The translations under genes were made by a program, and so were the position numbers. From positions 20,336,001 through 20,400,000 of the forward strand of contig NC_091291.1 of NCBI RefSeq assembly GCF_032444005.1: a DNA stretch of 64,000 nucleotides, written 5' to 3'. The notes beneath the pieces were generated by a model. It had not been told where the DNA came from, made no database searches, and was given only the letters and a program-made list of their open reading frames with translations. Below are positions 13,917 through 58,480 of this stretch, piece after piece; the first letter of the stretch is position 1, and each line of letters starts with the position of its first letter. This DNA comes from Ranitomeya imitator (Eukaryota).

Positions 13917-14927
13917 ATGGAGAACAGCACAACAGCGGCGTATCCAACCTCCGGTATTCCACTCCTGATGGGCACTTCTAATCCCACCGATTATTATTAT
14001 TATGACATAAGTGATGAAGAGCATGCAATATCTTCTATAAATTACTTAGTTTTGGTGATGTACTCTTTGACGCTTCTATTGGGAACTCTCGGAAACGGCC
14101 TGGTTATCTGGATCGCAATCTTCAGGATGAAGAAGACAGTCAACGTCATTTGGTTCCTTAACTTATCAATTGTTGACTTATTCTTCGTATTATTCCTCCC
14201 CTTGCGCATCATCTACATGGCTAATGGTTTCAACTGGCTCTTCGGAAACTTCATGTGTAAGTTTAGCAGCATGGTGGCTTTCATCAATCTATATGTAAGC
14301 GTCTTCCTGCTCACCGCCATCAGTATGGACCGTTGTGCCTCTGTCATCTTCCCAGTATGGTGTCGGAACTACCGAACTCCGAGACTGGCTTTAACCTTTG
14401 TCATAGCTATCTGGATAATGGCTATTTTGTTAAGCTTACCCCATTTTATTTTTCGAGATACCATCAAGCAAAATGATCATATCGTTTGTTATAACAACTT
14501 TGAACTTGATGAGTCCTCAGAAGATGGTATTTACCGCCAAAAAATGACGGTGATGATAAGATTAATTGTGGGATTTTGCATTCCTTTCACCATCATTGTC
14601 ACATGATACTCTGTGATTGCCATACATATCCGAAAAAAACACTTAGCCACCTCTTCGAAGCCCTTCAAAGTCATAATCGCCGTGATAATTGCCTTCTTCA
14701 TATGTTGGGCTCCTTATCATATTTTCTCCATCTTGGAATTTCATTCATATTATCACGAAAATTATTATTTAAATAATAGAATTCGCTTTGGGATTCCTAT
14801 CGTCACCAGCCTGCCGGCCTTCATGAACAGCTGCGTCAATCCTTTTCTCTACGTATTTATTGGTCGGGATTTTAGAGATAAATTCTGTGGCTCTTTCCAG
14901 TCCATTTTGGAAAAAGCTTTTTCTTAA
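13917..14927 (+). pseudogene. CMKLR1/GPR33-like chemoattractant GPCR paralogue 1, with one in-frame nonsense codon in TM5
   Basis: 7TM motifs GNGLVIW, WFLNL, MDRC, CWAPYH and NSCVNPFLYVF. TGA at 14604-14606 sits where paralogue 2 has TGT (Cys). The frame continues to TAA at 14925-14927 with no frameshift. Confidence 0.93.
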
Positions 14928-17034: not shown

Positions 17035-18075
17035 ATGTCGCAGCACGGAGACGCCGCAGCGCCCGGCAACGCTAATGCAGCTAAAAGACAGAGTGTCAAT
17101 AGAGAGTCCGGCAGCGCAGCGGTGCAAGGAGTGGCGCCCATCATGCCGGTGCTGATGCCATATACCCCGGGTGGCCCATGGCTTCTAATGTATGAAGGTG
17201 AGCCTAATACCCTTGGCGATTTCAGAGAAAAGATGCTGGCCCATTTTGACATGTTCCCTGTGGGTGAAGTTCAGCGTGTTAGTCTCCTGATGATGCAGTT
17301 AAGTGGCCATGCTAAGCGAGAAGTCACAGCATGGGCAGCTGATCTAAAAGGCACTGTTGAACGCATATTTGCTGGATTAAAAGCTACATTTGAAACCACG
17401 GCCAGCAGCAAAGCTAAAATACGATTCTTTAGTTGCAAACAAAAAGCTAATGAGGGCGTGAGAGACTTTGCCTTAAACCTGCAGGAAGCCCTTAAATCAC
17501 TTACACTGGCTGAACCCATTTTTAACACCGGAGCGGATAAACTGCTAAGAGATCAATTTATTGAGGGACTCTACACCCCTTCTCACCGGGGGCATGTGAG
17601 CATGCTTGTTTTTAAGAACCCTGAATTGACATTTGCCCAATTAAAGGAGAGCGCTATACGTCTCCAGCTGGCAGAGGCACCTCGGGATCAGGATCCTGCA
17701 CAACCCATGGCAGAGGCTCCTCAACAACAGGGAGTGCCAGTGACATCAGCTATGTCCGGGGCCATTGCTAAGCCCCTGGGGCCCAGTACTAATGAGGCTC
17801 TTCAACAAAAGCTTGACTCTTTAGCTGATGTTGTTGCTTCAATGGCTAAAACCATGCAGGAGATGAGAGGACACAAGATGGAGTTGGCAAACTGTAGAGA
17901 GGATGTTCCATGGATGAGACCCCGGAGATACCCGACATGGAGAGGACGACCCCGCGACCGCTACCAACCGGATGGACAGCCCATTTGCCGCCGTTGCCAG
18001 CAGCCGGGCCACTTTGCACGAGATTGTGATTTAAACGGGAATCCCCTGGGAATGCGGGCCGCTTCGCAGGAATGA
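17035..18075 (+). CDS. gag: Gypsy Gag, 346 aa
   Basis: C-terminal CCHC zinc knuckle CRRCQQPGHFARDC and capsid-like LRDQFIEGL. First ORF after the PBS. Confidence 0.93.
   Translation: MSQHGDAAAPGNANAAKRQSVNRESGSAAVQGVAPIMPVLMPYTPGGPWLLMYEGEPNTLGDFREKMLAHFDMFPVGEVQRVSLLMMQLSGHAKREVTAWAADLKGTVERIFAGLKATFETTASSKAKIRFFSCKQKANEGVRDFALNLQEALKSLTLAEPIFNTGADKLLRDQFIEGLYTPSHRGHVSMLVFKNPELTFAQLKESAIRLQLAEAPRDQDPAQPMAEAPQQQGVPVTSAMSGAIAKPLGPSTNEALQQKLDSLADVVASMAKTMQEMRGHKMELANCREDVPWMRPRRYPTWRGRPRDRYQPDGQPICRRCQQPGHFARDCDLNGNPLGMRAASQE
18030..18070 (+). other. -1 programmed ribosomal frameshift signal (slippery T TTA AAC plus a GC-rich structure)
   Basis: The heptamer at 18030-18036 is in gag codon phase (gaT TTA AAC). 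The -1 frame is open (FKRESPGNAGRFAG) straight into the pol ORF MNFQGP. Downstream GCGG-GC-CGC and CCTG/CAGG pairings are possible. Confidence 0.8.
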
Positions 18076-18902
18076 ACTTTCAAGGCCCAACACCCTGGCA
18101 CGACAGGTACATCGGAGGACGACCCATTATCCCTATCGTGCTGGACGGAATTCCCCTCAACGCTTTGCTGGACACAGGTTCCCAGATTTCATCTATACCG
18201 TATATCCTTTATAAGAGGTACTGGGCTGATGCAGATATTGATAAAGGGCCCTCTGATGTTGAACTAGATATATGGGCCAGTAATGGTAAGTTGGTACCGA
18301 AACTAGGATTCAGGGAGATGACCATAAAGATTGGTAAAGTAGAACTGAAGAAACAGGGTATAATTGTTGTTGATGTTGACCGGCGGAACTGTGAACCAAC
18401 TGTATTGATAGGAATGAATGTGTTAGAGAACTGCTTTTCCGAAGTTATTTCTGTCTTACAGCAAATTGCTGAAACTGCCCAATCCTGCCAGCAGAGAGTT
18501 CTCCGGAGGGAAATAAAAGTATTGATGTTAAGGCAACAGGTAGAAGTTGCAGGTGGAGAAATCGGCAGTGTGAGGGTAAGTGATCCAACATCTATTGTAA
18601 TCCCACCAAAAACAGAAATGCTGGTATGGTGTAGAGCAGCCATTGGTACTAAGGGACGAGATTATCAAGCCTTAATAGAACCAGTGTACACCGACAGCAG
18701 GCCCACTATACTCACAGCACGAGGGGTAGTCGAGGTACACCGGGGACGAGTGCCGGTACGACTTTTGAACTGTGGAGAGGAAGAGGTCACTTTGCCAAGG
18801 TATGCTACAATGGCAAAGCTATATACTGTTGACAACAATGCCATCACAACCATTGAGCCCTTAGAACCAACCTGTCAGGTGGAAGGCAATGGCTCAGATT
18901 GA
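18072..18902 (+). CDS. pol: Pol N-terminal part: aspartic protease plus a degenerate dUTPase-like spacer, ending at an in-frame TGA
   Basis: ALLDTGSQIS protease motif and LIGMNVL. TGA at 18900-18902 is in frame with the downstream RT ORF. Confidence 0.88.
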   Translation: MNFQGPTPWHDRYIGGRPIIPIVLDGIPLNALLDTGSQISSIPYILYKRYWADADIDKGPSDVELDIWASNGKLVPKLGFREMTIKIGKVELKKQGIIVVDVDRRNCEPTVLIGMNVLENCFSEVISVLQQIAETAQSCQQRVLRREIKVLMLRQQVEVAGGEIGSVRVSDPTSIVIPPKTEMLVWCRAAIGTKGRDYQALIEPVYTDSRPTILTARGVVEVHRGRVPVRLLNCGEEEVTLPRYATMAKLYTVDNNAITTIEPLEPTCQVEGNGSD

Positions 18903-18905
18903 GAA

Positions 18906-21900
18906 ATGGAGGATTGGTGCCAACAGCTACACGTGGGCATAAATTCAACACCTACCCATCAAAAACAAGGGGTGTATAGGCTAGTGACGGAATATGAACA
19001 AGTCTTCAGTAAACACCCATTGGACTTCGGACGGATAGAAGGGGTAGAACACACAATCCCCACAGGTGACCATCCCCCAATAAAAGAAAGATATAGACCC
19101 ATACCGCCCGCTCACTATCAATGTGCAAAAGATATGCTGAGGGAAATGAAACAGGCCGGGGTAATAAGAGACAGCTGTAGCCCCTGGGCGGCCCCTCTAG
19201 TGATTGTCAAAAAAAAGGACGGAACCATGAGAATGTGCGTAGACTACCGGAAGATTAATAACATCACCCATAAAGACGCCTACCCCTTGCCTAGGATAGA
19301 AGAGTCCTTAACTGCTTTGAAATCTGCTAATTATTTTTCCACCTTAGACTTAACAAGCGGGTATTGGCAAGTCCCTGTGGCTGAGAGAGATAAGGAAAAG
19401 ACGGCATTCACCACACCAATGGGTCTATGTGAATTTAATCGCATGCCGTTCGGACTCTGCAACGCATCCGGTACCTTCCAGCGGCTGATGGAATGCTGCC
19501 TCGGACACAAGAACTTCGAGACCGTCCTCCTGTACCTAGATGATGTGATCGTCTACTCAAAGACTTACGAACAACACTTAATAGACCTGGCAGAAGTGTT
19601 CGAAGCCTTATCCAGGTATGGCATGAAAGTCAAGCCATCCAAATGTCACCTTCTCAAGCCAAAGGTACAGTACCTGGGACACATCGTGAGTTCGGAGGGA
19701 GTAGCACCAGATCCCGAGAAAATAAGCGCCATAAGGGATTGGCCAAGACCTACCAGCGCAAAAGAAGTGAGACAATTCCTGGGATTGGTGGGTTACTATC
19801 GCAGATTTATAAAAGGATTTACCAAGTTGGCAGCACCCTTGCAAGACACCTTGGTAGGGCAGACGAAGAAACCTTCAAACCGAAACCCTCCTTTTCAGTG
19901 GAACGACGAAAGGGAAGACTCCTTTGAACAACTAAAGAAGGCACTAACTGGAGAAGAGGTTCTGGCATACCCAGATTACCATCAACCTTTCATCCTCTAC
20001 ACCGATGCCAGTAATGTGGGACTAGGAGCGGTGCTGTCACAAAAGCAAGAAGGTCGGGAGAAAGTCATCGCCTTTGCAAGTAGAAAGCTCCGGCCTATTG
20101 AAAGAAATTCAGAAAATTACAGCTCCTTCAAATTGGAACTACTGGCAGTAGTTTGGGCTGTGACGGAGCGTTTCAAACACTATCTGGCCGCTGCAGAATT
20201 TATTGTCTATACTGACAACAATCCGTTGACCCACCTGGACACAGCCAAATTAGGTGCGTTAAAACAGCGATGGATAGCCCGGTTATCTAATTACAACTTC
20301 ATAATCAAGTATCGAGCAGGTCGCAAGAATGGAAATGCCAATGCCCTGTCCCGGATGCCACACTTGAGAGATGTAGAAGAGGAAACGGGGGAGCTTGAAG
20401 AAATTGAACTACCAGCCTTCCATCGTCCCAAGGCAAAACATCATCAGTCAAGTACCTATCAGAAACAACAAGAGGTGAATTTTAATCCGTTAGCACACCA
20501 TAGATGGGCTGACACCCAAGACAGCAATCCGGCTGTGAAGTTGGTGAAGGAACTGTTGACTGAGCAAAGTGCATATCCCGATGAGGATGCCCCAGAAGAG
20601 ACGCATCAACTCTGGAAAGAGAGAGGCAAAATGTTCCTGTATCAAGGGAAGCTCTGTAGAAGATACACCAATCCGAAAACACATGAATTGGTTTGGCAGA
20701 TTATTGTGCCTAAACAAGATGTGAAGATGGTCCTCGAAGCTTACCATAATGGTGCTGGTCACTTCGGTTGGAAAAAGTTAGAAGTACTTCTAAGAGAAAG
20801 ATTTTATTGGGTCGGGATGAGAAAATCAATCGAACAGTGGTGCAGAAATTGTGGCCCGTGCAACCTCAGAAGAAACGATCAAAAGAACCAAAGAGCACCA
20901 CTGCAGCCCATAATCACCAAACAACCACTTGAACTTGTAGCCATAGACCACGTGAAGTTGACACCAAGCCAGTCCGGCTATGTCTATGCCTTGACCATCG
21001 TGGACCATTATTCACGCTTCTTGGTAGTAGTACCCGTAAAAGATCTGACAGCAAAAATAGCAGCCAAAGCGTTCCAAACATACTTTTGTAGACCCCATGG
21101 ATATCCGGAACAGGTTCTCACCGACCAAGGTACAGCCTTTGAATCAGAGATCTTCAGAGAATACTGTAATATGTATGGTTGCAAAAAGATCCGGACGACG
21201 GCCTATCATCCACAAAAAAACGGCTTATGCGAGAAGATGAACCATATTGTAATAGAACTACTAAAGACTTTACCTGAGACAGAAAGGAATCAATGGCCAG
21301 AGAAATTGCCTGACTTGGTGGATCTGTATAATCATGTCCCGGTGAGCTCCACCAATTGCACCCCAGCTTACCTTATGCGTGCAAGACCCGGCCAATTACC
21401 AATCGATCTAGAAATGGGAATTCTGAAACCAGACGCAGAAGTTCAAGACTCCAATTGGGATATCATACGGCAAAAGCAGTATCGCCAAGTGCAAGAGAGT
21501 GTGGAAAGAAGCCTTCAGCAAACTAGAGAAAGACAAAAGCGAACTTTCAACCAGAATGCTCTAGCGACCCCATTAAGACCGGGTGACCAAGTGCTCAAGA
21601 GAAATCGTCGAACCAATAAACTGGACAATCAGTGGGAAGCCGTACCCTACACAGTTTTACCAACAAGAGTGGATAATCCTAAAATGTGTCTCATTAGCAA
21701 AAACGGAGGCTTAACATCTGTACTAGTGCCAAGAGACAATCTTAAATTGTGTCCGGAAGCATTGAAAGAGCCAGACGTTGTCCAGCCAGAACCAGAAGTT
21801 ATTCAACCCATACAGGTTCAACCAGTAAAAGAAAAAGAAGAGGAAGTGTATCACACCTGTATAGGAGACTTTCCCAAAACCCTACTAACATACCATGGTG

Positions 21901-22208
21901 CAGTAGTGGTTCCCATGGTGGCCTTTTACCCAACACCGAACCCAATACCAGAAGTCCCAAGACAGGAAGAGGCTGACCCCGTACTACAGGAGGTTCCAGG
22001 CCAGGAAGAACAGATTCCTGGTCAGAGTAATCCCATTCACGGTGGACTTGCCAACTCCATAGTCGTGGAATTATCTTTAGCAGAGCGGGCAGATACTACA
22101 TCCGCAGTAGACAGTAGTACACCACATGAAGAGACACCGCTATTACGTAGATCACAGCGTAGTACCCAGGGTCAATTACCGGCCAGGTATGCAGATTACC
22201 AACTATAA
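18906..22208 (+). CDS. pol: Pol: reverse transcriptase, RNase H and integrase (1100 aa)
   Basis: SPWAAP, CVDYRKIN, LDLTSGYWQV, YLDDVIV, RNase H TDASNVGLGAVL, integrase HHCC (H..GH...C..C), and a D,D35E core (AIDH, TDQG, CEKMN). Confidence 0.97.
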   Translation: MEDWCQQLHVGINSTPTHQKQGVYRLVTEYEQVFSKHPLDFGRIEGVEHTIPTGDHPPIKERYRPIPPAHYQCAKDMLREMKQAGVIRDSCSPWAAPLVIVKKKDGTMRMCVDYRKINNITHKDAYPLPRIEESLTALKSANYFSTLDLTSGYWQVPVAERDKEKTAFTTPMGLCEFNRMPFGLCNASGTFQRLMECCLGHKNFETVLLYLDDVIVYSKTYEQHLIDLAEVFEALSRYGMKVKPSKCHLLKPKVQYLGHIVSSEGVAPDPEKISAIRDWPRPTSAKEVRQFLGLVGYYRRFIKGFTKLAAPLQDTLVGQTKKPSNRNPPFQWNDEREDSFEQLKKALTGEEVLAYPDYHQPFILYTDASNVGLGAVLSQKQEGREKVIAFASRKLRPIERNSENYSSFKLELLAVVWAVTERFKHYLAAAEFIVYTDNNPLTHLDTAKLGALKQRWIARLSNYNFIIKYRAGRKNGNANALSRMPHLRDVEEETGELEEIELPAFHRPKAKHHQSSTYQKQQEVNFNPLAHHRWADTQDSNPAVKLVKELLTEQSAYPDEDAPEETHQLWKERGKMFLYQGKLCRRYTNPKTHELVWQIIVPKQDVKMVLEAYHNGAGHFGWKKLEVLLRERFYWVGMRKSIEQWCRNCGPCNLRRNDQKNQRAPLQPIITKQPLELVAIDHVKLTPSQSGYVYALTIVDHYSRFLVVVPVKDLTAKIAAKAFQTYFCRPHGYPEQVLTDQGTAFESEIFREYCNMYGCKKIRTTAYHPQKNGLCEKMNHIVIELLKTLPETERNQWPEKLPDLVDLYNHVPVSSTNCTPAYLMRARPGQLPIDLEMGILKPDAEVQDSNWDIIRQKQYRQVQESVERSLQQTRERQKRTFNQNALATPLRPGDQVLKRNRRTNKLDNQWEAVPYTVLPTRVDNPKMCLISKNGGLTSVLVPRDNLKLCPEALKEPDVVQPEPEVIQPIQVQPVKEKEEEVYHTCIGDFPKTLLTYHGAVVVPMVAFYPTPNPIPEVPRQEEADPVLQEVPGQEEQIPGQSNPIHGGLANSIVVELSLAERADTTSAVDSSTPHEETPLLRRSQRSTQGQLPARYADYQL

Positions 22209-24520: not shown

Positions 24521-26584
24521 AAGAAAAGTTATATATGTTTTTTATATTTTTTGTGTCTTTTTTTAACATAACTATTTTATAACCCTGGCCCTAAAACTAA
24601 CCCTAGCTCCAACTCTATTATTACCAGTAACCCTATTCCTAGTTTTTGAGATAGTATGTAAAATTTATTGCAATGTTAGAATATTTTTTAGTATTTTTTT
24701 TACAGTGATCAACCTTTTACCTTTTATTTTTTAGTATTTTTTTTTACAGTGATCAACCTTTTACATTTTAGGAAAGATCTCCGAGCAGGACTCTATTCCT
24801 CCTCCCGAAAGATTATAAATGAGAATGAAAGCAGGGAGTTGAGAAGCAGCAGGTGCCAGCTGTGTTAGACATCTGACATCTGCTTGTAAAAGCTATGTTC
24901 TGATTGCTGCTGTTATTTGTTTACTTGCTGCAAATTAATTGCAGCACTAAGGATGCAATGAGATTTCAGGGTCCCAGCGCAATACCATGACAACATGAAC
25001 CCTAGAACCTTTTTTTTTTTTACAAACATTTGATTTTATTTTCAGTAAAATAAAAGCAATTAATGTACAAGTTTGGTGTCGGAATATTCATACTGATCTG
25101 AAGAATCTTGTCGTCGGCTCAATATTAATACACAATGTGTTCTATAAAAAATAAATCCAAAAAATGAACTGAGGAATTGTGTTTTCTTTTAGTTTTAACA
25201 TTTCACTACACTTTAATTTATTTTGGTTTCCAGTACATTAGATGGTAAAATAAAATGAATATTTCTAAACGACATCTCCTCCTGCAATAATTAAACGCTT
25301 ACATGGCTATGTCAATGGAAAAATGAAAAAGTCTTGGCTCTTGGAAGAAAGATGGGGAAAAAAACAATAGCGCAAAAATAAAAAATTGTTGTGGTGGGAA
25401 AGGGTTGACTTATGTGTAGAGTTGAGCGAATATGTTCAGAATCCGTCTCCGAATCAGAATTTGCCATATTCGTGCCATATTGGTATCCTATTTGTGCCAA
25501 ATTTATGTTTGACGATCGGTTCCGAACATATTCGATCATTTCTACACCCATTGACTTCAATGACGTTTGGCTGTGTTCGGCGAACATTGCAAAAACAATA
25601 TTTACCGCCGATCGCAACACGTTCTACATAGAGACAGAAGAGTAGTAATCCAAAATGTATGTGTGTTGTGAATGGGAGACATCAAAGCAGCTGGTCTCCA
25701 TCCACTAGTTGTGAGACAACTGAAAATTAGAAATAGACTGCAGAGGAGAAAACCTGCTGAAAAATGCAAAATGCAATTTATGGAATGACTATAAATTGTG
25801 TCATTCCTCATGTACACGCACCACACCTTATTTTGAATGGTAGGTATGCTCAAACAAAAAAAGTAGATCATGTAAAAAGATTCTGCCCATCTAAAAAGAA
25901 AGTGACAGAGATGAGCTGCTGGCCGGAAGCCCTGCAAACCTGCCAGCTTCTCCAGCTCCAGTTTTGATTATCCGACCTTGTGCAACATCTTCATTGGGGC
26001 ATGACACAGAGACAAAGTCGTGACAAGTCGGGTAATCAAAATTGTAGGTCTTGATCTTGGCAGGTATTGGGAGGTTGTGGAGGATGATGACTTGACCGTT
26101 GGACCAGGGTCTTATTTACTCATCTCTAGTCATGACCCTGTCATCCATAGTGGGAACCTATCATGGAGGTTCTCACCATAATGTGCTCCCACTCCTCAGT
26201 CAGCAAGATCCACCCTCTCCTCGTGAAAGCTTTCCTCTTTATACAGGTTGTCAATGGAAAGGTGGGTGAAGTCCACTCTATAAAATTACCCGAACTTGGC
26301 TCCAGCTGCAGCTCATAAAAATTGTTATGAAAACTACTACGAAACACCAATGAAAACTCTCCATACACATGAAAGTCAATTTTTGGTGGAATCTACTGAT
26401 CATCTAATGTGTCTTGTGACCTCCCGATTCTCCTACCAAAGATGATATCGGGAGAGATAAGGATGAATTAAAATGTCAGATCACTTTGTTCTCTGGGCAG
26501 ATAAGCTGCTATCAGATGAGACTGCCAGAGAACAAGTAAACTCTCAATGCAATAGTTTATTATGGCAATTAGAGTCCTACTGAA

Positions 26585-28328
26585 TCACCTAACTACAATC
26601 TTTAATCTCTCCCTCTCCTCTGGCATTTTCCCCTCCTCCTTCAAACACTCTATCTTTACTCCATTACTAAAGAAACCCGCTCTCGACCCATCCTACCCAA
26701 ATAACTACAGACCAGTCTCCAATCTCCTCTTCATCTCTAAACTCTTGGAGCGCTTGGTCTACTCCCGCCTTACCCGCTACCTCTCCACTCACACCTTCCT
26801 AGACCCTTCACCGTCCAGCTTCCGCCCCCTACATTCGACTGAAACTGCACTCATCAAAGTGACCAACGACCTTCTGACAGCAAAATGTAACGGTGACCAC
26901 TCTCTGCTCATTCTTCTTGACCTTTCTGCAGCGTTCGACACTGTTGACCACCATCTCCTACTCTCTAGGCGCCAGTCACTTGGCATTACGGACACTGCTC
27001 TCTCCTGGTTCTCCTCCTTCCTTTCTGACCGCTCCTTCAGTGTTCTGTTCTCTGGCTCCACTTCATCTCCTCTTCCTCTCACTGTCGGGGTACCTCAGGG
27101 CTCAGTCCTTGGCCCCCTTCTCTTCTCCCTCTACACAGCTCCAATTGGACAGACCATCAGCAGATTTGGCTTTCAGTACCATCTTTATGCCGATGATACA
27201 CAACTATACACGTCATCCCCTGACCTTACTCCCGCTGTACTACAGAACGCCACTGACTGTCTGTCTGCAGTCTCCAACATCATGTCCGCTCTCTATTTGA
27301 AACTCAACTTCTCCAAAACTGAACTTCTTCTGCTCTCGCCATCTACTAACCTCCCTAAATCTGACATTTCCCTCTCCGTGGGTGGCACCATAATAACACC
27401 CCGGCAGCAGGTGCACTTTCTGGGTGTTATGTTTGACTTCGATCTCTCCTTCATATCCCATATACAATCTCTTGCCCGCTCGTGCCGCTTACTCCTAAAG
27501 AACATCTCTAGAATCTGCCCTTTTCTCACCATGGAAACAATAAAAACCCTCACGGTCGCCCTGATCCACTCCCGCCTGGACTACTGTAACGCTCTACTAA
27601 TTGGCCTCCCCCTTATTCGACTTTCCCCTCCCCAGTCCATCCTTAATGCAGTAGCCAGGGTCGTCCATCTGGCTAATCGTTACTCGGACGCGTCCGCTCT
27701 TCGCCAGTCGTTACACTGGCTGCCCATTCATTACAGGATACAATTCAAAGTACTTGTTCTCACCCACAAAGCTCTCCACAGTGCGGCACCCCCTTACATC
27801 TCCTCCCTCATTTCTGTCTATCTGCCTAACCGACCGCTGCACTCTGCAAATGACTTTCGGCTAACCTCTGCACTAATCTGTACCTCCCACTCCCGACTCC
27901 AAGACTTCTCCCGTGCTGCGCCAATCCTCTGGAATGCTCTACCCCAAGATATTAGGACCATCCATAATTTGCATAGTTTTAGGCGCTCGCTCAAAACACA
28001 TTTGTTCAGAGCGGCCTACCATGTTCACTAATCAAAGTCATTTTATGTTTGTGTGTGTGTAGCCCATTCACTATCTCCATCTATTCCCCACCCCCTGAAG
28101 ATGGCTGGACCATCATTGTAAATACATCATTGTAAATGCACACCTGTGCTTTGTATCTCCCCACCTCATTGTAGATTGTAAGCTCTCACGAGCAGGGTCG
28201 TCTTATTTTGCTTTAATTATTGTATTGTTAACATTGTTACTTATGACTGTTGTGTTTGATACTGTTAAACTGTAAAGCGCTGCGGAATATGTTGGCGCTA
28301 TATAAATAAAGATTATTATTATTATTAT
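26585..28328 (+). mobile_element. 5'-truncated L2-clade LINE with an open RT domain, 3' UTR and (ATT)n tail
   Basis: ORF 26562-28031 carries [39 protein letters not shown] and YADDTQLY. The 3' end is AAAGCGCTGCGG...GGCGCTATATAAATAAAG(ATT)n. Confidence 0.95.
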
Positions 28329-29448: not shown

Positions 29449-31208
29449 TATAGAGACAGGAGAGCAGGAGTCCTTCATGTCTGTATGTGCTGAGGATAAG
29501 TAAATAAGGCAGCACACTGCAGCGCTAAAACATGTAAACTTGAAATACGAAATTTGAACTGCATTACTGCACTAGAAATATGAAAAATGAGAGCGTTTAG
29601 CGCATAAAAATGGCCAATTTTATGTGTACCTGGTAGCCCCTTTACGGCATCTCTCTTATACCAGGTCCTAAACTTGCCTTACCTCGCTTTGAAATGTATG
29701 TGCTATGGAGACAGGAGAGCAGGAGTCCTTCATGTCTGTGTGTGCTATAGAGACAGGAGAGCAGGAGTCCCTCATGTCTGTGTGCTATAGAGACAGGAGA
29801 GCAGGAGTCCTTCATGTCTGTGTGTGATATAGAGACAGGAGAGCAGGAGTCCCTCATGTCTGTGTGCTATAGAGACAGGAGAGCAGGAGTCCTTCATGTC
29901 TGTGTGTGCTATAGAGACGGGAGAGCAGGAGTCCTTCATGTCTGTGTGCTATAGAGACAGGAGAGCAGGAGTCCTTCATGTCTGTGTGTGCTATAGAGAC
30001 AGGAGAGCAGGAGTCCTTCATGTCTGTGTGTGCTATAGAGACAGGAGAGCAGGAGTCCTTCATGTCTGTGTGTGCTGTAGAGACAGGAGAGCAGGAATCC
30101 TTCATGTCTGTGTGCTATAGAGACTGGAGAGCAGGAGTCCTTCATGTCTGTGTGTGCTATAGAGACAGGAGAGCAGGAGTCCTTCATGTCTGTGTGTGAT
30201 ATAGAGACAGGAGAGCAGGAGTCCTTCATGTCTGTGTGTGCTATAGAGACAGGAGAGCAGGAGTCCTTCATGTCTGTGTGTGCTATAGAGACAGGAGAGC
30301 AGGAGTCCCTCATGTCTGTGTGCTATAGAGACAGGAGAGCAGGAGTCCTTCATGTCTGTGTGTGCTATAGAGACGGGAGAGCAGGAGTCCTTCATGTCTG
30401 TGTGCTATAGAGACAGGAGAGCAGGAGTCCTTCATGTCTGTGTGTGCTATAGAGACAGGAGAGCAGGAGTCCTTCATGTCTGTGTGTGCTATAGAGACAG
30501 AAGAGCAGGAGTCCTTCATGTCTGTATGTGCTATAGAGACAGGAGAGCAGGAGTCCTTCATGTCTGTGTGTGCTATAGAGACAGGAGAGCAGGAGTCCCT
30601 CATGTATGTGTGTGCTATAGAGACAGGAGAGCAGGAGTCCTTCATGTCTGTGTGTGCTATAGAGACTGGAGAGCAGGAGTCCTTCATGTCTGTATGTGCT
30701 ATAGAGACAGGAGAGCAGGAGTCCCTCATGTCTGTGTGTGCTATAGAGACAGGAGAGCAGGAGTCCTTCATGTCTGTGTGCTATAGAGACAGGAGAGCAG
30801 GAGTCCTTCATGTCTGTATGTGCTATAGAGACAGGAGAGCAGGAGTCCTTCATGTCTGTGTGTGCTATAGAGACAGAAGAGCAGGAGTCCCTTATATCTG
30901 TGTGTGCTATAAGAGACAGGAGAGCAGGAGTCCTTCATGTCTGTATGTGCTATAGAGACAGGAGAGCAGGAGTCCTTCATGTCTGTGTGTGCTATAGAGA
31001 CAGAAGAGCAGGAGTCCTTCATGTCTGTGTGTGCTATAGAGACAGGAGAGCAGGAGTCCCTCATGTCTGTGTGTGCTATAGAGACAGAAGAGCAGGAGTC
31101 CCTTATATCTGTGTGTGCTATAAGAGACAGGAGAGCAGGAGTCCTTCATGTCTGTGTGTGCTATAGAGACAGGAGAGCAGGAGTCCCTCATGTCTGTGTG
31201 TGCTATAG
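29449..31208. repeat. 41/39-bp minisatellite, with the first unit split off by a foreign insert of about 200 bp (about 29492-29692)
   Basis: About 38 copies of GTGTGCTATAGAGACAGGAGAGCAGGAGTCCTTCATGTCT(GT). A lone unit lies at about 29449-29491. Confidence 0.97.
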
Positions 31209-31750
31209 ACTATAAACATAAGGATGAATGATCTCGGGGAGATCAAAACATCCAACACCGTGGAGACATCATCACGTGTTTCTCAACGCAGTGATCCAGA
31301 ACACTTCCCCCATCCCTTATGGGAAATATGCAAATGCATGTAGAAAAGCTGCGGAGACACCATCACGTGTTTCTCAACGCAAGCAATAAATAGCCAGGTC
31401 TTTCACCGGGAAGGAACAACCACGGGAAGGGCAGCATCCAAAAAGGAAAACCACCTATGCCAAAACATTGTATCCATCCACAGACAGCTGTTTCGGGCTA
31501 TTTTCCCCTCATCAGTGTGGAGTAGGAAACTGGCTATTAGGAGCAGTGCCTAGTAAAAGGACTATAAACATAAGGATGAATGATCTTGGGGAGATCAAAA
31601 CATCCAACACTGCGGAGACACCTTCACGTGTTTCTCAACGCAGTGATCCAGAACACTGCTCCCATCCCTTATGGGAAATATGCAAATGCATGTAAAGTAC
31701 GCTGCAGAGACACCATCACGTGTTTCTCAACGCAAGCAATAAATAGCCAG
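31208..31750 (-). mobile_element. Tandem 352-bp monomer (about 1.5 copies) carrying a hammerhead ribozyme: non-LTR retrozyme or Penelope-type terminal repeat
   Basis: GACTATAAACATAAGGATGAATGA starts at 31208 and again at 31560. No ORF. The hammerhead lies in the non-duplicated half. Confidence 0.8.
31478..31520 (-). ncRNA. Type I hammerhead ribozyme with a complete catalytic core
   Basis: Minus strand reads CCACA-CTGATGA-GGG GAAAATAG CCC-GAAAC-AGCT-GTC^TGTGG. Stem I is TCCACA/TGTGGA and stem III is palindromic ACAGCTGT. The predicted cut is after GUC, between 31483 and 31482. Confidence 0.9.
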
Positions 31751-32100
31751 ATCCTTGGAGATATCCCCAAATCCTTTGCCATATAACTTTCTCGACTGTG
31801 ATGATTACATTGATTTCCCAGATATGTAATATTACCAGTGGAGTTATCTGTAGATTTTACTTGTTTTAAAAAATAATTATGAGATCTCGCCAAAAGAAGA
31901 AGAATGAAGTTTATTCATTAGGATTTCCTAAATTCTTTAATGAGACTATAACGCTGATCTAGTGATAAAATACCAAAGCACTAAGGTGTCATGTCTTTAA
32001 TACAAAATGATATATAGTAATTTATAATTGTTGTTATTAGTGTTTTTCTTTACATTTTGTAGCCTTTTGAAGAACTGTCCAACTGTCCACAACTAAAGCC

Positions 32101-33102
32101 ATGGAGAACCATACAACAGCGTATTCGACCTTCAATATTCCACTCCTTGATGGCACTGCTGTTCCCACCGATTATGATTATGATGACTTTATGGAATACA
32201 CAAAATCCTCTGTAGATTATTTTGTTTTGGTGATGTACTCTTTGACTTTATTACTAGGAACTATAGGAAACGGCCTAGTTATCTGGATCGCAGTCTTCAA
32301 GATGAAGAAGACAGTCAACGTCATTTGGTTCCTTAATTTGTCAATTGTCGACTTTATCTTCATATTATTTCTCCCCTTGCGCATCATCCACCTGGCTAAT
32401 GGTTTCAACTGGCTCTTCGGAAACTTCATGTGCAAGTTGAGCAGCATGGTGGCTTTCATCAATCTGTACGCTAGCGTGTTCCTGCTCACCATCATCAGTA
32501 TGGACCGTTGTGCCTCTGTCATCTTCCCGGTTTGGTGTCGAAACCATCGGACTGCGAAACTGGCTAAAATCGTTGTCACTTCTGTTTGGATCCTGGCCAT
32601 TTTATTTAGCTTACTATACTTTATTTTTAGAAAAACCTACCAGGATTATCACTACTCTTTTTGCTATGTCAACTTTGAACTTGGAGAGTCAGAAGAGATT
32701 GGTATTTACCGCCGTAAAACGACAGTGATAATAAGATTCATTATGGGATTTTGTATTCCTTTCACCATCATTGTCACGTGTTACTCTGTGATTGCCATAC
32801 GTATCCGAAGAAACCCCACTTCCACCTCTTCCAAGCCCTTCAAAGTCATAATCGCCGTGATAATTGCCTTTTTTGTCTGTTGGGCTCCTTATCATATTTT
32901 CTCCATTTTGGAATTGCGTACAATTCAGCAGACTGATGATTATCTATTGAAAGAACTTCGCTTTGGGTTTCCTATCGCAACCACCCTGCCGGCCTTCATC
33001 AACAGCTGCGTCAATCCTTTTCTTTATGTATTTATTGGTCGGGACTTTAGGGACAAATTCTGGAGCTCTTTTCCGTCCATATTGGAGAAATCTTTCAGTT
33101 AG
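32101..33102 (+). CDS. CMKLR1/GPR33-like chemoattractant GPCR paralogue 2, 333 aa, intact 7TM
   Basis: N-glycan site NHT, acidic Tyr-rich N-terminus DYDYDD, GNGLVIW, DRC, ECL2 Cys, CWAPYH and NPFLY. A splice acceptor lies just upstream of the ATG. Confidence 0.95.
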   Translation: MENHTTAYSTFNIPLLDGTAVPTDYDYDDFMEYTKSSVDYFVLVMYSLTLLLGTIGNGLVIWIAVFKMKKTVNVIWFLNLSIVDFIFILFLPLRIIHLANGFNWLFGNFMCKLSSMVAFINLYASVFLLTIISMDRCASVIFPVWCRNHRTAKLAKIVVTSVWILAILFSLLYFIFRKTYQDYHYSFCYVNFELGESEEIGIYRRKTTVIIRFIMGFCIPFTIIVTCYSVIAIRIRRNPTSTSSKPFKVIIAVIIAFFVCWAPYHIFSILELRTIQQTDDYLLKELRFGFPIATTLPAFINSCVNPFLYVFIGRDFRDKFWSSFPSILEKSFS

Positions 33103-33676
33103 GACTCTAAAAGACTTGAAAGAGCAAGATAAAGGGCCGTCGAGTTTTTAAAGAGTTTGTGGGACTTTCCAAGTGGAAAAACTTATCGTTGAAGATATCT
33201 TGTAATGCATGCATATTAAATGACCAGAGAGGACAGTTGTCCCAACGATTGTCTATTTTAGAGATTCAACTTTGCTTTTTTTTTCAATTCTAATTGTATG
33301 TCAAAAAGTCGATTTTACAACCAGTACTATAAAAAATATCAAAAATTAAAAAAAGTATTATATTATACATTTCCTAACTCAACCAAAGTGATTGTGGCAC
33401 ACGGGAACAGATCTCCTGCTACACGACAACTGTTTTCCTCAGCAGCAGTAAAATGGAATACCACACATAGATGCTGTAAATAATTTTTGGGTCTTTTCCA
33501 TATATACTGGATGAATTAAAAGGGTATTTCCATCTCCAAGATCCTATCCCAATATGTAGTAGGTGTAATAATAATAATAAAGGCAAAAACCTCCAATTAG
33601 AAATGTAGTCTTTCTGATTCGCAATGTCTCTTTCCTAATGTAAAGGCATTGCATGACCTTAAGTGTCACCATGTGT

Positions 33677-39400: not shown

Positions 39401-40475
39401 ACTTAAAAAATGTAAAAACATAATATAAAAATTAAATTGTCAGCCATGTGGACAATCTATAATGAGCCATATATAGGGAAGGAAGCCAAACTAACTAGTA
39501 GAGGGACGGGAATAATGAAGGTGGAAAAACCTTAACTCTTGATGCGTTGTGGGGTTGAGAGAACGAGATAATGATACTGATTCCTCCTACTTCCTCCTTC
39601 ACAGACTTTAGTTTTCTCGTTTAGTTCTTAGAATCTCTTATCTCAGGTTTCGGGCTAAGACTCGGAAGATCTGAATTTCACAATTTTTTCTGGTTAAACC
39701 CTCCTCCCAGCTTCCGTGTGCTTCTTGCACATACTGAGATTATCAGTCACACTGCTGATTGAGTGCTAACACTGCGCAGTAGGACAAAGGATGATAAAAG
39801 AGGACCTATCAGAAGGTGAAAGATGATCGGTTTTCTGAATTTGTTTTATTTCCACTGCTTCCTTCAGTATTCCAATTTTTCTTTCTAAAAACCCCTCCAG
39901 TTTCAGACTTTTCATGTATACAGATGAGTCTCATGACACGCCCCAGAGGATCCAGTAAGCACTGTCTCTTTAGTAAAGACCATACAAATCAGCACTGAAA
40001 AAAAAGTATTTTCACTGGTACCATACATAGAATCTTCAAATAAAAAAAGGTAACAAACACTGAAAGGAGCAACGGGAAGAACAAGAAAAACTGTCCACAA
40101 TTAGCCTCGTAATATCTTTAAATTTTGCTTTTAATCACATAAGTTTAGTGACTGGGTGTAATACAAGGAATTAGGAGGCTGATGAAGAGCTTCTAATACT
40201 TTCCAGGAGTAAATCCTGACGTCAGCTTTCCTTTCAGTTAAAATAAAAATTAACAGTGAATATTAGTCCTTTTTAATCAGTTGTTAAGTCAATTTGTACA
40301 ATATTTTTGTTTCTGAGAAAGTTTAATGACATCCAAAATAGTAAAAATGGGAGCCACTCAACTTTTCCAGGATCATTAATACAAAATAAATCAAGTAATG
40401 TTGGAATAAAGAAATGACATGTGTAACTAGGGTGTTTGGTTAGTTTCCTGTTCCGAGGTTTACAGAGCTGGAAAT

Positions 40476-43400
40476 GCTGCTCTGGAGTATAATACAGGAT
40501 ATAACTCAGGATCAGTAATGTAATGTATGTACACAGTGACTGTACCAGCAGAATAGTGAGTGCAGCTCTGGGGTATAATACAGGATGTAACTCAGGATCA
40601 GTAATGTAATGTATGTACACAGTGACTGCACCAGCAGAATAGTGAGTGCAGCTCTGGGGTATAATACAGGATGTAACTCAGGATCAGTAATATAATGTAT
40701 GTACACAGTGACTGCACCAGCAGAATAGTGAGTGCAGCTCTGGAGTATAATACAGGATATAACTCAGGATCAGTAATGTAATGTATGTACACAGTGACTG
40801 TACCAGCAGAATAGTGAGTGCAGCTCTGGGGTATAATACAGGATGTAACTCAGGATCAGTAATGTAATGTATGTACACAGTGACTGCACCAGCAGAATAG
40901 TGAGTGCAGCTCTGGGGTATAATACAGGATGTAACTCAGGATCAGTAATATAATGTATGTACACAGTGACTGCACCAGCAGAATAGTGAGTGCAGCTCTG
41001 GAGTATAATACAGGATATAACTCAGGATCAGTAATGTAATGTATGTACACAGTGACTGTACCAGCAGAATAGTGAGTGCAGCTCTGGGGTATAATACAGG
41101 ATGTAACTCAGGATCAGTAATATAATGTATGTACACAGTGACTGCACCAGCAGAATAGCGAGTGCAGCTCTGGGGTATAATACAGGATGTAACTCAGGAT
41201 CAGTAATATAATGTATGTACACAGTGACTGCACCAGTAGAATAGTGAGTGCAGCTCTGGGGTATAATACAGGATATACAGGATCAGTAATGTAATGTATG
41301 TACACAGTGACTGCACCAGTAGAATAGTGAGTGCAGCTCTGGAGTATAATACAGGATATAACTCAGGATAAGTAATGTAATGTATGTACACAGTGACTGC
41401 ACCAGCAGAATAGTGAGTGCAGCTCTGGGGTATAATACAGGATGTAACTCAGGATCAGTAATGTAATGTATGTACACAGTGACTGCACCAGCAGAATAGT
41501 AAGTGCAGCTCTGGGGTATAATACAGGATGTAACTCAGGATCAGTAATATAATGTATGTACACAGTGACTGCACCAGCAGAATAGTGAGTGCAGCTCTGG
41601 GGTATAATACAGGATGTAACTCAGGATCAGTAATATAATGTATGTACACAGTGACTGCACCAGCAGAATAGTGAGTGCAGCTCTGGAGTATAATACAGGA
41701 TGTAACTCAGGATCAGTAATGTAATGTATGTACACAGTGACTGCACCAGTAGAATAGTGAGTGCAGCTCTGGGGTATAATACAGGATATAACTCAGGATC
41801 AGTAATGTAATGTATGTACACAGTGACTGCACCAGTAGAATAGTGAGTGCAGCTCTGGGGTATAATACAGGATATAACTCAGGATCAGTAATGTAATGTA
41901 TGTACACAGTGACTGCACCAGTAGAATAGTGAGTGCAGCTCTGGAGTATAATACAGGATGTAACTCAAGATCAGTAATGTATGTGCACAGTGACTGCACC
42001 AGCAGAATAGTGAGTGCAGCTCTGGGGTATAATACAGGAGGTAACTCAGGATCAGTAATGTAATGTATGTACACAGTGACTGCACCAGCAGAATAGTGAG
42101 TGCAGCTCTGGAGTATAATACAGGATTTAACTCAGGATCAGTAATGTAATGTATGTACACAGTGATTGCACCAGCAGAATAGTGAGTGCAGCTCTGGAGT
42201 ATAATACAGGATGTAACTCAGGATCAGTAATGTAATGTATGTACACAGTGACTGCACCAGCAGAATAGTGAGTGCAGCTCTGGAGTATAAAACAGGATGT
42301 AACTCAGGATCAGTAATGTAATGTATGTACACAGTGACCGCACCAGCAGAATAGTGAGTGCAGTTCTGGAGTATAATACAGGATGTAACTCAGGATCAGT
42401 AATGTAATATATGTACACAATGACTACACCAGCAGAATAGTGAGTGCAGCTCTGGAGTATAATACAGGATGTAACTCAGGATCAGTAATGTATGTGCACA
42501 GTGACTGCACCAGCAGAATAGTGAGTGCAGCTCTGGGGTATAATACAGGAGGTAACTCAGGATCAGTAATGTAATGTATGTACACAGTGACTGCACCAGC
42601 AGAATAGTGAGTGCAGCTCTGGAGTATAATACAGGATGTAACTCAGGATCAGTAATGTAATGTATGTACACAGTGAGTACACCAGCAGAATAGTGAGTGC
42701 AGCTCTGGAGTATAATACAGGATGTAACTCAGGATCAGTAATGTAATGTATGTACACAGTGACTGCACCAGCAGAATAGTGAGTGCAGCTCTGGGGTATA
42801 ATACAGGATGTAACTCAGGATCAGTAATGTAATGTATGTACACAGTGACTGCACCAGCAGAATAGTGAGTGCAGCTCTGGAGTATAATACAGGATGTAAC
42901 TCAGGATCAGTAATGTAATGTATGTACACACTGACTGCACCAGCAGAATAGTGAGTGCAGCTCTGGGGTATAATACAGGATGTAACTCAGGATCAGTAAT
43001 GTAATGTATAAACACAGTGACTGCACCAGCAGAATAGTGAGTGCAGCTCTGGAGTATAATACAGGATGTAACTCAGGATCAGTAATGTAATGTATGTACA
43101 CAGTGACTGCACCAGCAGAATAGTGAGTGCAGCTCTGGAGTATAATACAGGATGTAACTCAGTATCAGTAATGTAATGTATGTACACAGTGACTGCACCA
43201 GCACAATAGTGAGTGCAGCTCTGGAGAATAATACTGGATGTAACTCAGGATCAGTAATGTATGTGCACAGTGACTGCACCAGCAGAATAGTGAGTGCAGT
43301 TCTGGAGTATAATACAGGATGTAACTCAGGATCAGTAATGTAATGTATGTACACAGTGACTGCACCAGCAGAATAGTGAGTGCAGCTCTGGAGTATAATA

Positions 43401-43675
43401 CAGGATGTAACTCAGGATCAGTAATGTAATGTATAAACACAGTGACTGCACCAGCAGAATAGTGAGTGCAGCTCTGGGGTATAATACAGGATATAACTCA
43501 GGATCAGTAATGTAATGTATGTACACAGTGACTGCACCAGCAGAATAGTGAGTGCAGCTCTGGAGTATAATACAGGATGAAACTCAGGATCAGTAATGTA
43601 ATGTATGTACACAGTGACTGCACCAGCAGAATAGTGAGTGCAGCTCTGGGGTATAATACAGGATGTAACTCAGTA
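40476..43675 (+). repeat. 86-bp satellite array 2 (about 37 units)
   Basis: Same unit and orientation as array 1. There is a 258-bp three-unit period at its start and a decayed unit to about 43740. Confidence 0.98.
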
Positions 43676-57654: not shown

Positions 57655-58480
57655 TAGGCTTCTGCACATGATTGGTGTGCCACTGCACAGGGTTGGGCAT
57701 CTGCACAGGATTGGTGTGCCGCTGCACAGGGTTGGGCCTCTGCACAGGATTGGTGTGCCACTGCACAGGGTTGGGCCTCTGCACAGGATTGGTGTGCCGC
57801 TGCACAGGGTTTGGCCTCTGCACATGATTGGTGTGCCACTGCAGAGGGTTGGGCTTCTACACAGGATTGGTCCACCACTGCACATGGTTGGGCCTCTGCA
57901 CAGGGTTGGTGTGCCGCTGCACAGGGTTCGGCCTCTGCACAGGATTGGTCTGTTGCTACAGAGGGTTGGGCTTCTACACAGGATTGGTCCACCACTGCAC
58001 AGGGTTGGGCCTCTGCACATGATCGGTCTGCCACTGCACAGGGTTAAGCTTCTACACAGGATTGGTCTACTGCTGCACATGATTGGGCCTCTGCACAGGA
58101 TTGGGCTCTGCACAGGATTGGTGTGCCGCTGCACAGGGTTGGGCCTCTGCACAGGATTGGTCTGTCGCTGCACAGGGTTGTGCTTCTACACAGGATTGGT
58201 CTGTCGCTGCACAGGGTTGGGCTTCTACACAGGATTGGTCTGCCACTGCACCGGGTTGGGCCTCTGCACAAGATTGGTCTGTTGCTGCACAGGGTTGGGC
58301 TTCTACACAGGATTGGTCCGCCACTGCGCAGGATTGGGCTCTGCACAGGATTGGTCTGCCACTGCACAGGGTTAAGCTTCTACACAGGATTGGTCTACTG
58401 CTGCACATGATTGGGCATCTGCACAGGATTGGCCCTTTGCACAGGTTTGGTGTGCCACTGCACAGTATTGGACCTCTGCA
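57655..58480. repeat. 39-bp minisatellite (open in several frames)
   Basis: Unit GCACAGGGTTGGGCCTCTGCACAGGATTGGTGTGCCACT. A solitary related unit lies at about 56891-56920. Confidence 0.93.

What the first reader, a model, noticed from the sequence alone, without database searches (positions are those of the whole stretch)
31208..31750. Frog retrozyme candidate: 352-nt tandem monomer with an intact type I hammerhead, in a GPCR intron
Seen: a non-coding 352-bp unit repeated about 1.5 times. Its minus strand folds into a complete hammerhead (CUGAUGA, GAAAC, GUC cleavage triplet, 6-bp stem I, 3-bp stem II, palindromic ACAGCUGU stem III). Known: non-LTR retrozymes such as newt satellite 2 are tandem monomers of about 170-400 nt with type I hammerheads that yield circular RNAs, and Penelope-associated minimal hammerheads with palindromic stem III cleave as dimers. 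Inference: this is a member of an anuran retrozyme family mobilised by a Penelope RT. It is antisense to the receptor 2 pre-mRNA, so it would not cut that transcript. With only one ribozyme, this copy alone cannot excise a monomer.
Basis: partly seen in the sequence, partly recalled or inferred. Interest (0 to 1): 0.85.

Follow-up and report, generated by a model that had tools for sequence, protein, structure and literature searches.

The report
Decayed hammerhead retrozyme copy near GPCR
This is a real but ordinary, slightly decayed copy of a very abundant amphibian-type mobile repeat that carries a self-cleaving hammerhead RNA motif, a kind of element already described in frogs and salamanders.

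Summary
A non-coding 351-352-nt unit is present 1.56 times head to tail (31207-31559 full, 31560-31756 partial, 93% alike). Its minus strand carries one complete type I hammerhead at 31477-31521: helix I 6 bp, helix II 3 bp, helix III 2 bp with a palindromic AGCU loop, cleavage at 31483|31482.

Rfam Hammerhead_1 matches end to end at 28.5 bits, below its gathering score of 34.

Contigs of public runs show a family of roughly 10^4-10^5 copies in this organism and a close relative. The family majority has a better ribozyme: a 4-bp helix II (GGGG/CCCC) and loop CAAAUA. This copy has two private changes there, so "intact" is overstated.

- The insert is longer than one unit and runs across the cleavage site, so its template was a multimer or a circle.
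- A related organism seems to lack the insertion.
- The family appears in RNA-labelled runs, but neither circles nor the transcribed strand could be tested.
- Penelope mobilisation and "intron" remain untested. The element lies 345 bp upstream of an intact chemerin/FPR-like receptor ORF on the opposite strand.

This kind is known from the newt, the axolotl and Xenopus, including a 2026 catalogue. The scan's first readers noted many hammerhead elements elsewhere in this genome. Interest is low.

The parts
31207..31559 (-). Full repeat unit (351-352 nt). In RNA sense this is the downstream, complete copy, and it contains the hammerhead.
   Evidence: Self-BLAST and alignment. The rise in family depth starts at about 31202-31227.
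31560..31756 (-). Partial unit (197 nt, 92.9% identical to 31208-31403). In RNA sense it is the upstream, 5'-truncated copy, and it lacks the ribozyme region.
   Evidence: Depth falls to the single-copy level after about 31756. The organism B contig stops matching at 31761.
31477..31521 (-). Type I hammerhead ribozyme motif: helix I 6 bp, helix II 3 bp plus a G.G mismatch, helix III 2 bp with a palindromic AGCU loop.
   Evidence: Descriptor scan. Rfam RF00163 at 28.5 bits, E 1.1e-5, model positions 1-45 of 45.
31482..31483 (-). Predicted self-cleavage site: after C17 (31483) and before U1.1 (31482), GUC|U.
   Evidence: Read directly from the sequence and from the Rfam alignment. Cleavage itself was not tested.
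31495..31508 (-). Helix II and loop 2. This copy reads GGGG-AAAAUA-GCCC. The family majority reads GGGG-CAAAUA-CCCC. The private changes are at 31498 and 31504.
   Evidence: Other-letter tables: 31498 C>G and 31504 T>G in about 99.8% of family depth in X1, X2, X7 and the RNA-labelled runs; 31500 A>T in 47%.
31484..31491 (-). Palindromic helix III segment ACAGCUGU, able to form an 8-bp intermolecular helix in a double hammerhead.
   Evidence: The RNAcofold minimum-energy structure of two copies is the double hammerhead, -43.1 kcal/mol against 2 x -18.8.
31328..31335 (.). Perfect octamer ATGCAAAT in a family-invariant stretch of the unit. It recurs at 31680-31687 in the partial unit. It is a possible internal promoter element, a lead only.
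   Evidence: Motif positions. No variant of 10% or more is listed between 31270 and 31344.
31353..31381 (.). 29-nt internal sub-repeat with an E-box (CACGTG). It occurs twice per unit, 91-92 nt apart. The other copies are at 31262-31290, 31610-31642 and 31707-31734.
   Evidence: the repeat finder family D4, BLAST, CACGTG positions.

Best explanation
This is one dispersed, non-autonomous copy of a very high-copy amphibian-type hammerhead repeat, that is a metazoan 'non-LTR retrozyme' or hammerhead satellite. It sits 345 bp upstream of a chemoattractant-receptor coding exon, on the opposite strand.

How the family most likely works (inferred from the published model):
1. Multimeric minus-strand transcripts are made from arrays elsewhere in the genome.
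2. Neighbouring units pair through the palindromic helix III into double hammerheads.
3. [quoted passage not shown]
4. A tRNA ligase of the RtcB type circularises them.
5. A reverse transcriptase, proposed to be that of Penelope-like elements, copies circles or multimers into cDNA longer than one unit, which integrates.

What is shown at this locus:
- The insert is 1.56 units long and continuous across the cleavage site, so its template was an uncleaved multimer or a religated circle.
- It holds a single ribozyme whose helix II has lost a base pair and whose loop 2 has changed.

This copy therefore cannot release a monomer by itself and is best seen as an inert, decaying insertion. At most it could pair in trans with family transcripts if its minus strand is transcribed.
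For: - Motif: complete, beyond chance for this window, and recognised by Rfam.
- Family size: 8585 and 11300 contigs were laid. Summed depth is 10^5-10^6 against 8.66 (X1) and 17-27 (X2) on unique flanks.
- Family consensus: it restores a canonical 6/4/2-bp hammerhead whose loop 2, CAAAUA, equals the Rfam consensus loop. No variant of 10% or more is listed in CUGAUGA, GAAAC, GUC or helix I.
- Unit junction: contigs from other copies cross it. Examples are X1 at 31477-31597, X17 at 31509-31619, and a 260-nt organism C contig at 31322-31581 with 96% identity.
- Dimer fold: it is the predicted minimum-energy structure.
- Composition: non-coding, GC 46%.
- RNA-labelled runs: depth on the element is in the hundreds to thousands, and zero on the adjacent unique sequence.
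- Insertion boundary: a single-copy 790-nt contig of organism B matches 31761-32330 at about 96% and then continues for 219 unmatched letters. This is within 5 nt of the element's end, so the insertion is probably lineage-specific.
- Literature: the architecture, unit size and copy number match amphibian retrozymes (PMC7229834), frog repeat-associated hammerheads (PMC3088659, PMC4209133) and the vertebrate catalogue (bioRxiv 10.64898/2026.07.22.740005).
Against: - There is no target-site duplication of 6 nt or more at the ends.
- The Rfam score is below the gathering threshold.
- The circular monomer fold is only marginally more stable than shuffles (z -1.7; 10 of 200 shuffles fold as well).
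- Neither circular RNA nor the transcribed strand could be examined, because contigs have no direction. DNA carry-over of a 10^5-copy repeat could also explain its presence in RNA-labelled runs.
- Conservation of the core is not clearly stronger than that of the rest of this homogeneous unit, so it does not prove selection.
- No covariation could be tested, because no other copies could be fetched.
- No Penelope RT lies in the window.
- In the 2026 preprint only 1 of 9 Xenopus dimer constructs cleaved in vitro.
Confidence: 0.75

Rival explanations
1. It is a piece of hammerhead-bearing satellite DNA that reached this site at the DNA level, by segmental duplication, reintegration of extrachromosomal circular DNA from an array, or recombination. 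No RNA intermediate was involved.
For: There is no target-site duplication and no poly(A) or other retroposition signature. The ends are arbitrary relative to the unit. It abuts another high-copy tandem repeat, the 42-bp array. The two units already differ by 7%, as neighbouring units of an old genomic array would.
Against: The family is dispersed at very high copy number and this copy is isolated in unique, gene-rich DNA. The published biology of the same kind of repeat favours RNA circles and retroposition (PMC7229834). Many of the differences between the units are CpG transitions, which accumulate fast.
Confidence: 0.13
2. It is the terminal repeat (pLTR) remnant of a 5'-truncated autonomous Penelope-like element, not a separate non-autonomous family.
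For: Penelope insertions typically show a 5'-truncated upstream copy followed by a full repeat, and they carry type I hammerheads in their pLTRs (PMC4209133). Xenopus retrozyme families are reported to be related to pLTRs (bioRxiv 10.64898/2026.07.22.740005).
Against: The two units are directly head to tail with no RT/GIY-YIG ORF between them or nearby. The only RTs in the window are a Ty3/gypsy pol and a LINE. The ribozyme is the canonical 6/4/2 type with a helix III. It is not the Penelope 'min-HHR', which has a long helix II, a short helix I and no helix III (PMC4209133). A copy number of 10^4-10^5 exceeds what is reported for the elements themselves.
Confidence: 0.08
3. The hammerhead is a chance resemblance in an unrelated repeat and has no ribozyme ancestry.
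For: The Rfam score is below gathering. About 0.025 chance hits of this quality per 64 kb means hundreds per gigabase-scale genome.
Against: The family majority sequence is a better hammerhead than this copy, and its loop 2 is identical to the Rfam consensus loop. The unit size, tandem habit and abundance match known hammerhead repeats.
Confidence: 0.02

Closest known systems
Axolotl non-LTR retrozymes Rtz_331 / Rtz_353 (Cervera & de la Pena 2020, PMC7229834) and newt satellite 2 (Epstein & Gall 1987)
   Same: - Non-coding units of about 330-353 nt, head to tail, with GC below 50%.
- On the order of 10^5 copies.
- A type I hammerhead with a weak helix III (1-2 bp) capped by a palindromic tetraloop, which needs a dimer to cleave well.
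- Expressed family.
   Different: - By eye there is no sequence similarity outside the catalytic core to the Ax353 and Ax330 constructs printed in that paper's supplement. The helix I, II and III sequences differ.
- The host is a different, apparently anuran, genome.
- Circles and cleavage are shown for the axolotl but not here.
Xenopus non-LTR retrozyme families (Li, Clavereau & Pollet 2026, bioRxiv 10.64898/2026.07.22.740005) and repeat-associated hammerheads of X. tropicalis (Perreault et al. 2011, PMC3088659)
   Same: - Frog repeats with type I hammerheads occurring as monomers, dimers and multimers.
- Mean amphibian consensus length of 316 bp.
- About 44% of copies are intronic.
- Proposed dependence on Penelope-like elements.
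   Different: Identity with one of the 57 published families (or with REP4_XT) could not be checked. The consensus sequences are not held, and the organism of this window is not disclosed.
Schistosoma mansoni Sm-alpha hammerhead / Rfam RF00163 consensus
   Same: The family majority has the same loop 2 (CAAAUA), a 6-bp helix I and a 4-bp helix II, as seen in the Rfam consensus line. A UAC bulge lies just 5' of helix I; that this matches Sm-alpha rests on my memory of that structure and was not tested.
   Different: The helix sequences differ. Helix III here is 2 bp with a palindromic loop. The host repeat is unrelated.
Penelope-like element min-HHRs (Cervera & de la Pena 2014, PMC4209133; Lunse et al. 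2017)
   Same: Type I topology, a dimer-dependent design, and an association with retroelements in the same genomes.
   Different: Min-HHRs lack helix III, have a 7-8-bp helix II and a 4-5-bp helix I, and sit in pLTRs that flank an RT-endonuclease ORF. None of these holds here.

Membership tests
Hammerhead ribozyme type I (Rfam RF00163) | Conserved core: C3-U-G-A-N-G-A9, G12-A-A14, an A15.1:U16.1 pair, and a non-G at position 17 | tested here: met
   CUGAUGA at 31515-31509, GAAAC at 31494-31490 and GUC ending at 31483.
Hammerhead ribozyme type I (Rfam RF00163) | Three helices around the core, with helix I open | tested here: met
   Helix I 6 bp, helix II 3 bp (4 bp in the family majority), helix III 2 bp plus a tetraloop.
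Hammerhead ribozyme type I (Rfam RF00163) | Score at or above Rfam's gathering threshold (34 bits) | tested here: not met
   28.5 bits, E 1.1e-5 on 101 nt, and no hit at window scale. The flagged non-standard pair is the G.G at the top of helix II, which is a private change of this copy.
Hammerhead ribozyme type I (Rfam RF00163) | Site-specific self-cleavage | not testable with these tools
   This needs in vitro transcription of monomer and dimer constructs.
Metazoan non-LTR retrozyme (Cervera & de la Pena 2020) | Non-coding unit of about 170-400 nt with GC below 50% | tested here: met
   351 nt, GC 46%, longest ORF 75 aa.
Metazoan non-LTR retrozyme (Cervera & de la Pena 2020) | Head-to-tail copies, each with a type I hammerhead | tested here: inconclusive
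   This locus has 1.56 units but only one ribozyme. Contigs of other copies cross the unit junction, but array lengths elsewhere could not be seen.
Metazoan non-LTR retrozyme (Cervera & de la Pena 2020) | Multi-copy, dispersed family | tested here: met
   Depth ratio of about 10^4-10^5 to the unique flank in two organisms. This copy is isolated in unique DNA.
Metazoan non-LTR retrozyme (Cervera & de la Pena 2020) | Expression as unit-length linear and circular RNA | tested here: inconclusive
   Family contigs are present in RNA-labelled runs, at zero depth on the flank. There is no strand, end or circle information, and DNA carry-over is not excluded.
Metazoan non-LTR retrozyme (Cervera & de la Pena 2020) | Target-site duplication (present in some copies, not obligatory) | tested here: not met
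   No shared k-mer of 6 nt or more lies between the two immediate flanks.
Metazoan non-LTR retrozyme (Cervera & de la Pena 2020) | Co-occurrence with, and mobilisation by, Penelope-like elements | not tested
   No Penelope RT lies in this window.
Penelope-like element pLTR / min-HHR | Minimal hammerhead without helix III, with a long helix II, flanking an RT-GIY-YIG ORF | tested here: not met
   The architecture is the canonical 6/4/2 type and there is no such ORF nearby (PMC4209133).
Urodele satellite 2 / axolotl Rtz families | Sequence homology of the unit | tested here: inconclusive
   Compared by eye only with the Ax353 and Ax330 constructs in the supplement. Nothing beyond the catalytic core looks alike.

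The most novel reading that the evidence does not exclude
The insertion is young, being absent from the close relative. It brings its own promoter elements (octamer ATGCAAAT twice and four E-boxes) to within 350-900 bp of a chemoattractant receptor's coding exon.

It would be transcribed from an internal promoter on the ribozyme strand through its 3' end into the 42-bp array. A 120-nt contig with one mismatch bridges that junction at depth 503 in run X7, while the right flank has depth zero.

The copy would then be a lineage-specific source of promoter-upstream antisense RNA that can pair in trans with family transcripts into double hammerheads, or a new regulatory module for the receptor.
Probability: 0.06. 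Interest if true: 0.5.

Novelty: new member of a known kind. Interest (0 to 1): 0.22.

Why it matters
It matters little beyond annotation. It adds one more documented case of an amphibian hammerhead repeat. The insert is longer than one unit, which fits the multimer or circle template model. It also hints that the family was active after two close species split.

Its practical value is as a caution. Rfam's gathering cut-off and speed filters miss such decayed copies, so window-scale scans under-report them. A motif that looks 'intact' should be judged against the family consensus.

If the genome is one of those surveyed in the 2026 preprint, the family is very probably already catalogued.

Tried and rejected
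- Rfam at gathering on the whole window and at E<=10 on 1 kb gave no hammerhead. Only a 101-nt search recovered it.
- TRF did not list the 352-nt period.
- No other copy of the unit lies in the window.
- Exact-pattern scans of metagenome and viral contigs, using the family hammerhead and the 29-nt sub-repeat, found nothing. Other copies could therefore not be fetched, and no covariation test or covariance model was possible.
- The search of earlier findings by sequence was blank.
- The supplement held for the 2026 preprint is only an oligo order form.
- The 2010 papers of de la Pena & Garcia-Robles are not held.
- The circular fold of the monomer is not clearly special (z -1.7).
- No target-site duplication was found.
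- The flank consensus of the 42-bp repeat family was not found next to the element, so 'inserted into that repeat's parent element' could not be shown.
- A chance motif and a Penelope pLTR remnant were considered and ranked low, for the reasons given under the rival explanations.

Full report
**What is there**

The stretch 31207-31756 holds a 351-352-nt unit 1.56 times, head to tail. The full unit is 31207/9-31559. The partial unit is 31560-31756 and is 92.9% identical to 31208-31403. No ORF above 75 aa lies in it, GC is 46% and CpG observed/expected is 0.54. No further copy lies in the 64-kb window. Each unit contains two copies, 91-92 nt apart, of a 29-nt sub-repeat with an E-box, plus a perfect octamer ATGCAAAT.

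**The ribozyme**

On the minus strand, 31521->31477 reads as a complete type I hammerhead:
- helix I: UCCACA/UGUGGA, 6 bp
- CUGAUGA
- helix II: GGG/CCC
- GAAAC
- helix III: AC/GU closed by AGCU, so that ACAGCUGU is palindromic
- GUC, with cleavage between 31483 and 31482.

A descriptor scan finds only this site in the window. Random sequence of the same composition gives 0.025 such hits per 64 kb. Rfam RF00163 aligns over its whole 45-position model at 28.5 bits, E 1.1e-5, when 101 nt are searched. That is 5.5 bits under the gathering score, and the larger searches missed it. The only non-standard pair flagged is a G.G at the top of helix II.

**The family**

Logan contigs of a DNA run of the same organism (X1) were laid on the stretch. 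The unique right flank has depth 8.66, and the element has summed depths of 1.3e5 to 2.1e6 from 8585 contigs. A second, closely related organism (X2) gives the same picture, with unique depth 17-27 and element depth up to 1.6e6. The tool warns that summed depth is not a copy number, so I read this only as an order of magnitude: 10^4-10^5 copies.

The other-letter tables give the family majority:
- 31498 is G and 31504 is G in about 99.8% of depth in every run.
- 31500 is polymorphic (47% T).
- 31469 is G.

On the RNA strand the family's helix II and loop 2 therefore read GGGG-CAAAUA-CCCC. That is a 4-bp helix whose loop is identical to the Rfam consensus loop seen. This copy reads GGGG-AAAAUA-GCCC, so it carries two private changes that remove a base pair and alter loop 2. 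No variant of 10% or more is listed in CUGAUGA, GAAAC, GUC or helix I.

The whole unit is homogeneous, however (about 36 variable places in 548 nt), so this conservation does not by itself show selection.

The resulting 6/4/2 architecture with a palindromic loop 3 is what Cervera & de la Pena describe as the canonical metazoan type I hammerhead, one that works as a dimer (PMC4209133). RNAcofold of two copies gives exactly the double hammerhead with an 8-bp intermolecular helix III as the minimum-energy structure, -43.1 kcal/mol against 2 x -18.8.

**Tandem habit and mobility**

Contigs that differ from this locus by several letters cross the unit junction 31559/31560:
- X1 at 31477-31597
- X17 at 31509-31619
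- a 260-nt contig of a third organism, X20, at 31322-31581 with 96% identity, carrying the family-type ribozyme.

Continuity from unit end to unit start is therefore a property of the family and not a local duplication.

In RNA sense, counting from the cleavage site, the insert runs from unit position 79 through the ribozyme and the cleavage junction to position 275. It is longer than a monomer and continuous across the cleavage site, so its template was an uncleaved multimer or a religated circle. This follows directly from the coordinates.

In organism B, a single-copy 790-nt contig matches 31761-32330 at about 96% and then has 219 more letters that lie nowhere on 31150-33200. A unitig would break on entering a 10^5-copy repeat, so I infer that B has unique sequence there. 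The element, and at least the adjacent part of the 42-bp array, would then be absent at this site in B. The breakpoint is within 5 nt of the element's end.

The two units differ by 7%, somewhat more than the roughly 4% between the two organisms. Many of the differences are at CpG sites. The units may also have differed already in the template. I cannot separate these possibilities. No target-site duplication was found.

**RNA evidence**

Three runs labelled 'RNA?' show depths of hundreds to thousands on the element and zero on the neighbouring unique sequence. Contigs span the cleavage site: 31414-31495 and 31470-31558, with 1-4 mismatches. This is compatible with expression of the family. Contigs have no strand, circles cannot be seen, and a small DNA carry-over of such an abundant repeat would look the same. 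The circular monomer folds only marginally better than shuffles (z -1.7).

**Context**

The window holds three tandem rhodopsin-type receptor ORFs on the + strand:
- 13917-14927, with one in-frame stop
- 32101-33102, intact
- 52691-53788.

The nearest solved relatives are chemerin-like receptor 1 and FPR2. The element ends 345 bp upstream of the ATG at 32101 and its ribozyme is on the opposite strand, so it is not part of a sense transcript of the receptor.

A polypyrimidine-AG acceptor about 40 nt upstream of the ATG is shared with the paralogue. A 5'-UTR intron is therefore plausible, but no upstream exon was identified, and 'intron' remains unproven.

The RTs in the window belong to a Ty3/gypsy element and a LINE, not to a Penelope-like element.

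**Comparison with what is known**

Hammerhead-bearing repeats of about 330 nt have been known in newts since 1987. In the axolotl, units of 331 and 353 nt occur with about 126,000 ribozyme motifs. They cleave as dimers, give linear and circular RNAs, and are circularised by RtcB (PMC7229834). Repeat-associated hammerheads in X. tropicalis were reported in 2010-2011 (PMC3088659), along with about 9,000 min-HHRs (PMC4209133). A 2026 preprint finds non-LTR retrozymes in all seven amphibians sampled. It also finds 57 families in Xenopus, about 44% of copies in introns, and kinship with Penelope pLTRs. Only 1 of the 9 tested dimers cleaved in vitro (bioRxiv 10.64898/2026.07.22.740005).

The present unit shows no similarity by eye to the axolotl constructs outside the core. 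Whether it is one of the published frog families could not be checked.

First-stage readers of this scan left 128 unchecked notes mentioning hammerheads elsewhere in this genome. These include tandem units of 350 and 357 nt. I treat them as leads only.

**Verdict**

It is an ordinary, slightly decayed, single-ribozyme copy of a known kind of element. Penelope mobilisation, circles and intron status were not tested.

Noticed in passing
window 29697-31206 (solo unit at 29449-29491): A 42-bp minisatellite of about 36 units directly abuts the element's left end. It is itself a high-copy family, with depth about 2e4 against 8.66 on unique sequence. Other genomic copies have different, consistent flanks.
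   Followed up: partly
window 31180-31299: In run X7 (library kind unknown) a 120-nt contig with one mismatch bridges the junction between the 42-bp array and the element at depth 503. The unique right flank has depth 0 in the same run. Either this composite junction is multi-copy or the locus is transcribed across it. This is unexplained.
   Followed up: no
window 31482: One contig of the RNA-labelled run X17 matches from 31482 rightwards, with 255 unrelated letters before it. The break is 1 nt from the predicted cleavage site, as expected for a copy made from a self-cleaved RNA. It is a single case and only anecdotal.
   Followed up: no
window 13917-14927, 32101-33102, 52691-53788 (+): A tandem cluster of three chemerin/formyl-peptide-receptor-like GPCR paralogues. 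The first has an in-frame stop at 14604-14606 and may be a pseudogene. Paralogues 1 and 2 are 81% identical from about 90 nt upstream of the ATG.
   Followed up: partly
window 17035-22208 (+): A Ty3/gypsy retrotransposon with three long open frames: a gag-like ORF of 346 aa with a zinc knuckle, a protease-like ORF of 276 aa, and a pol of 1100 aa with RT, RNase H and integrase. It looks young.
   Followed up: partly
window 26562-28031 (+), tail to about 28330: A LINE reverse-transcriptase ORF (RVT_1, 489 aa) followed by a 3' tail ending in (ATT)n. It is not a Penelope-like element.
   Followed up: partly
window 10177-11199 (-) and 2998-3912 (+): ORFs that look like Tc1/mariner transposases; this is judged from the translations only, with no family search. 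The first is 340 aa and uninterrupted.
   Followed up: no
window 245-1823, 40273-43440, 54914-55528: Three arrays of another tandem repeat. They give near-identical mechanical ORFs (MYIHYITDPELHPVLYP...) and occur in both orientations.
   Followed up: no
window 51458-52133 and 57597-58756: Further short-period tandem arrays that produce long repetitive ORFs on both strands.
   Followed up: no
window 31328-31335, 31680-31687; 31273, 31364, 31625, 31717: The octamer ATGCAAAT and E-boxes CACGTG lie in family-invariant parts of the unit. From memory, newt satellite 2 is transcribed from an snRNA-type promoter, so an internal promoter is a lead worth testing.
   Followed up: no
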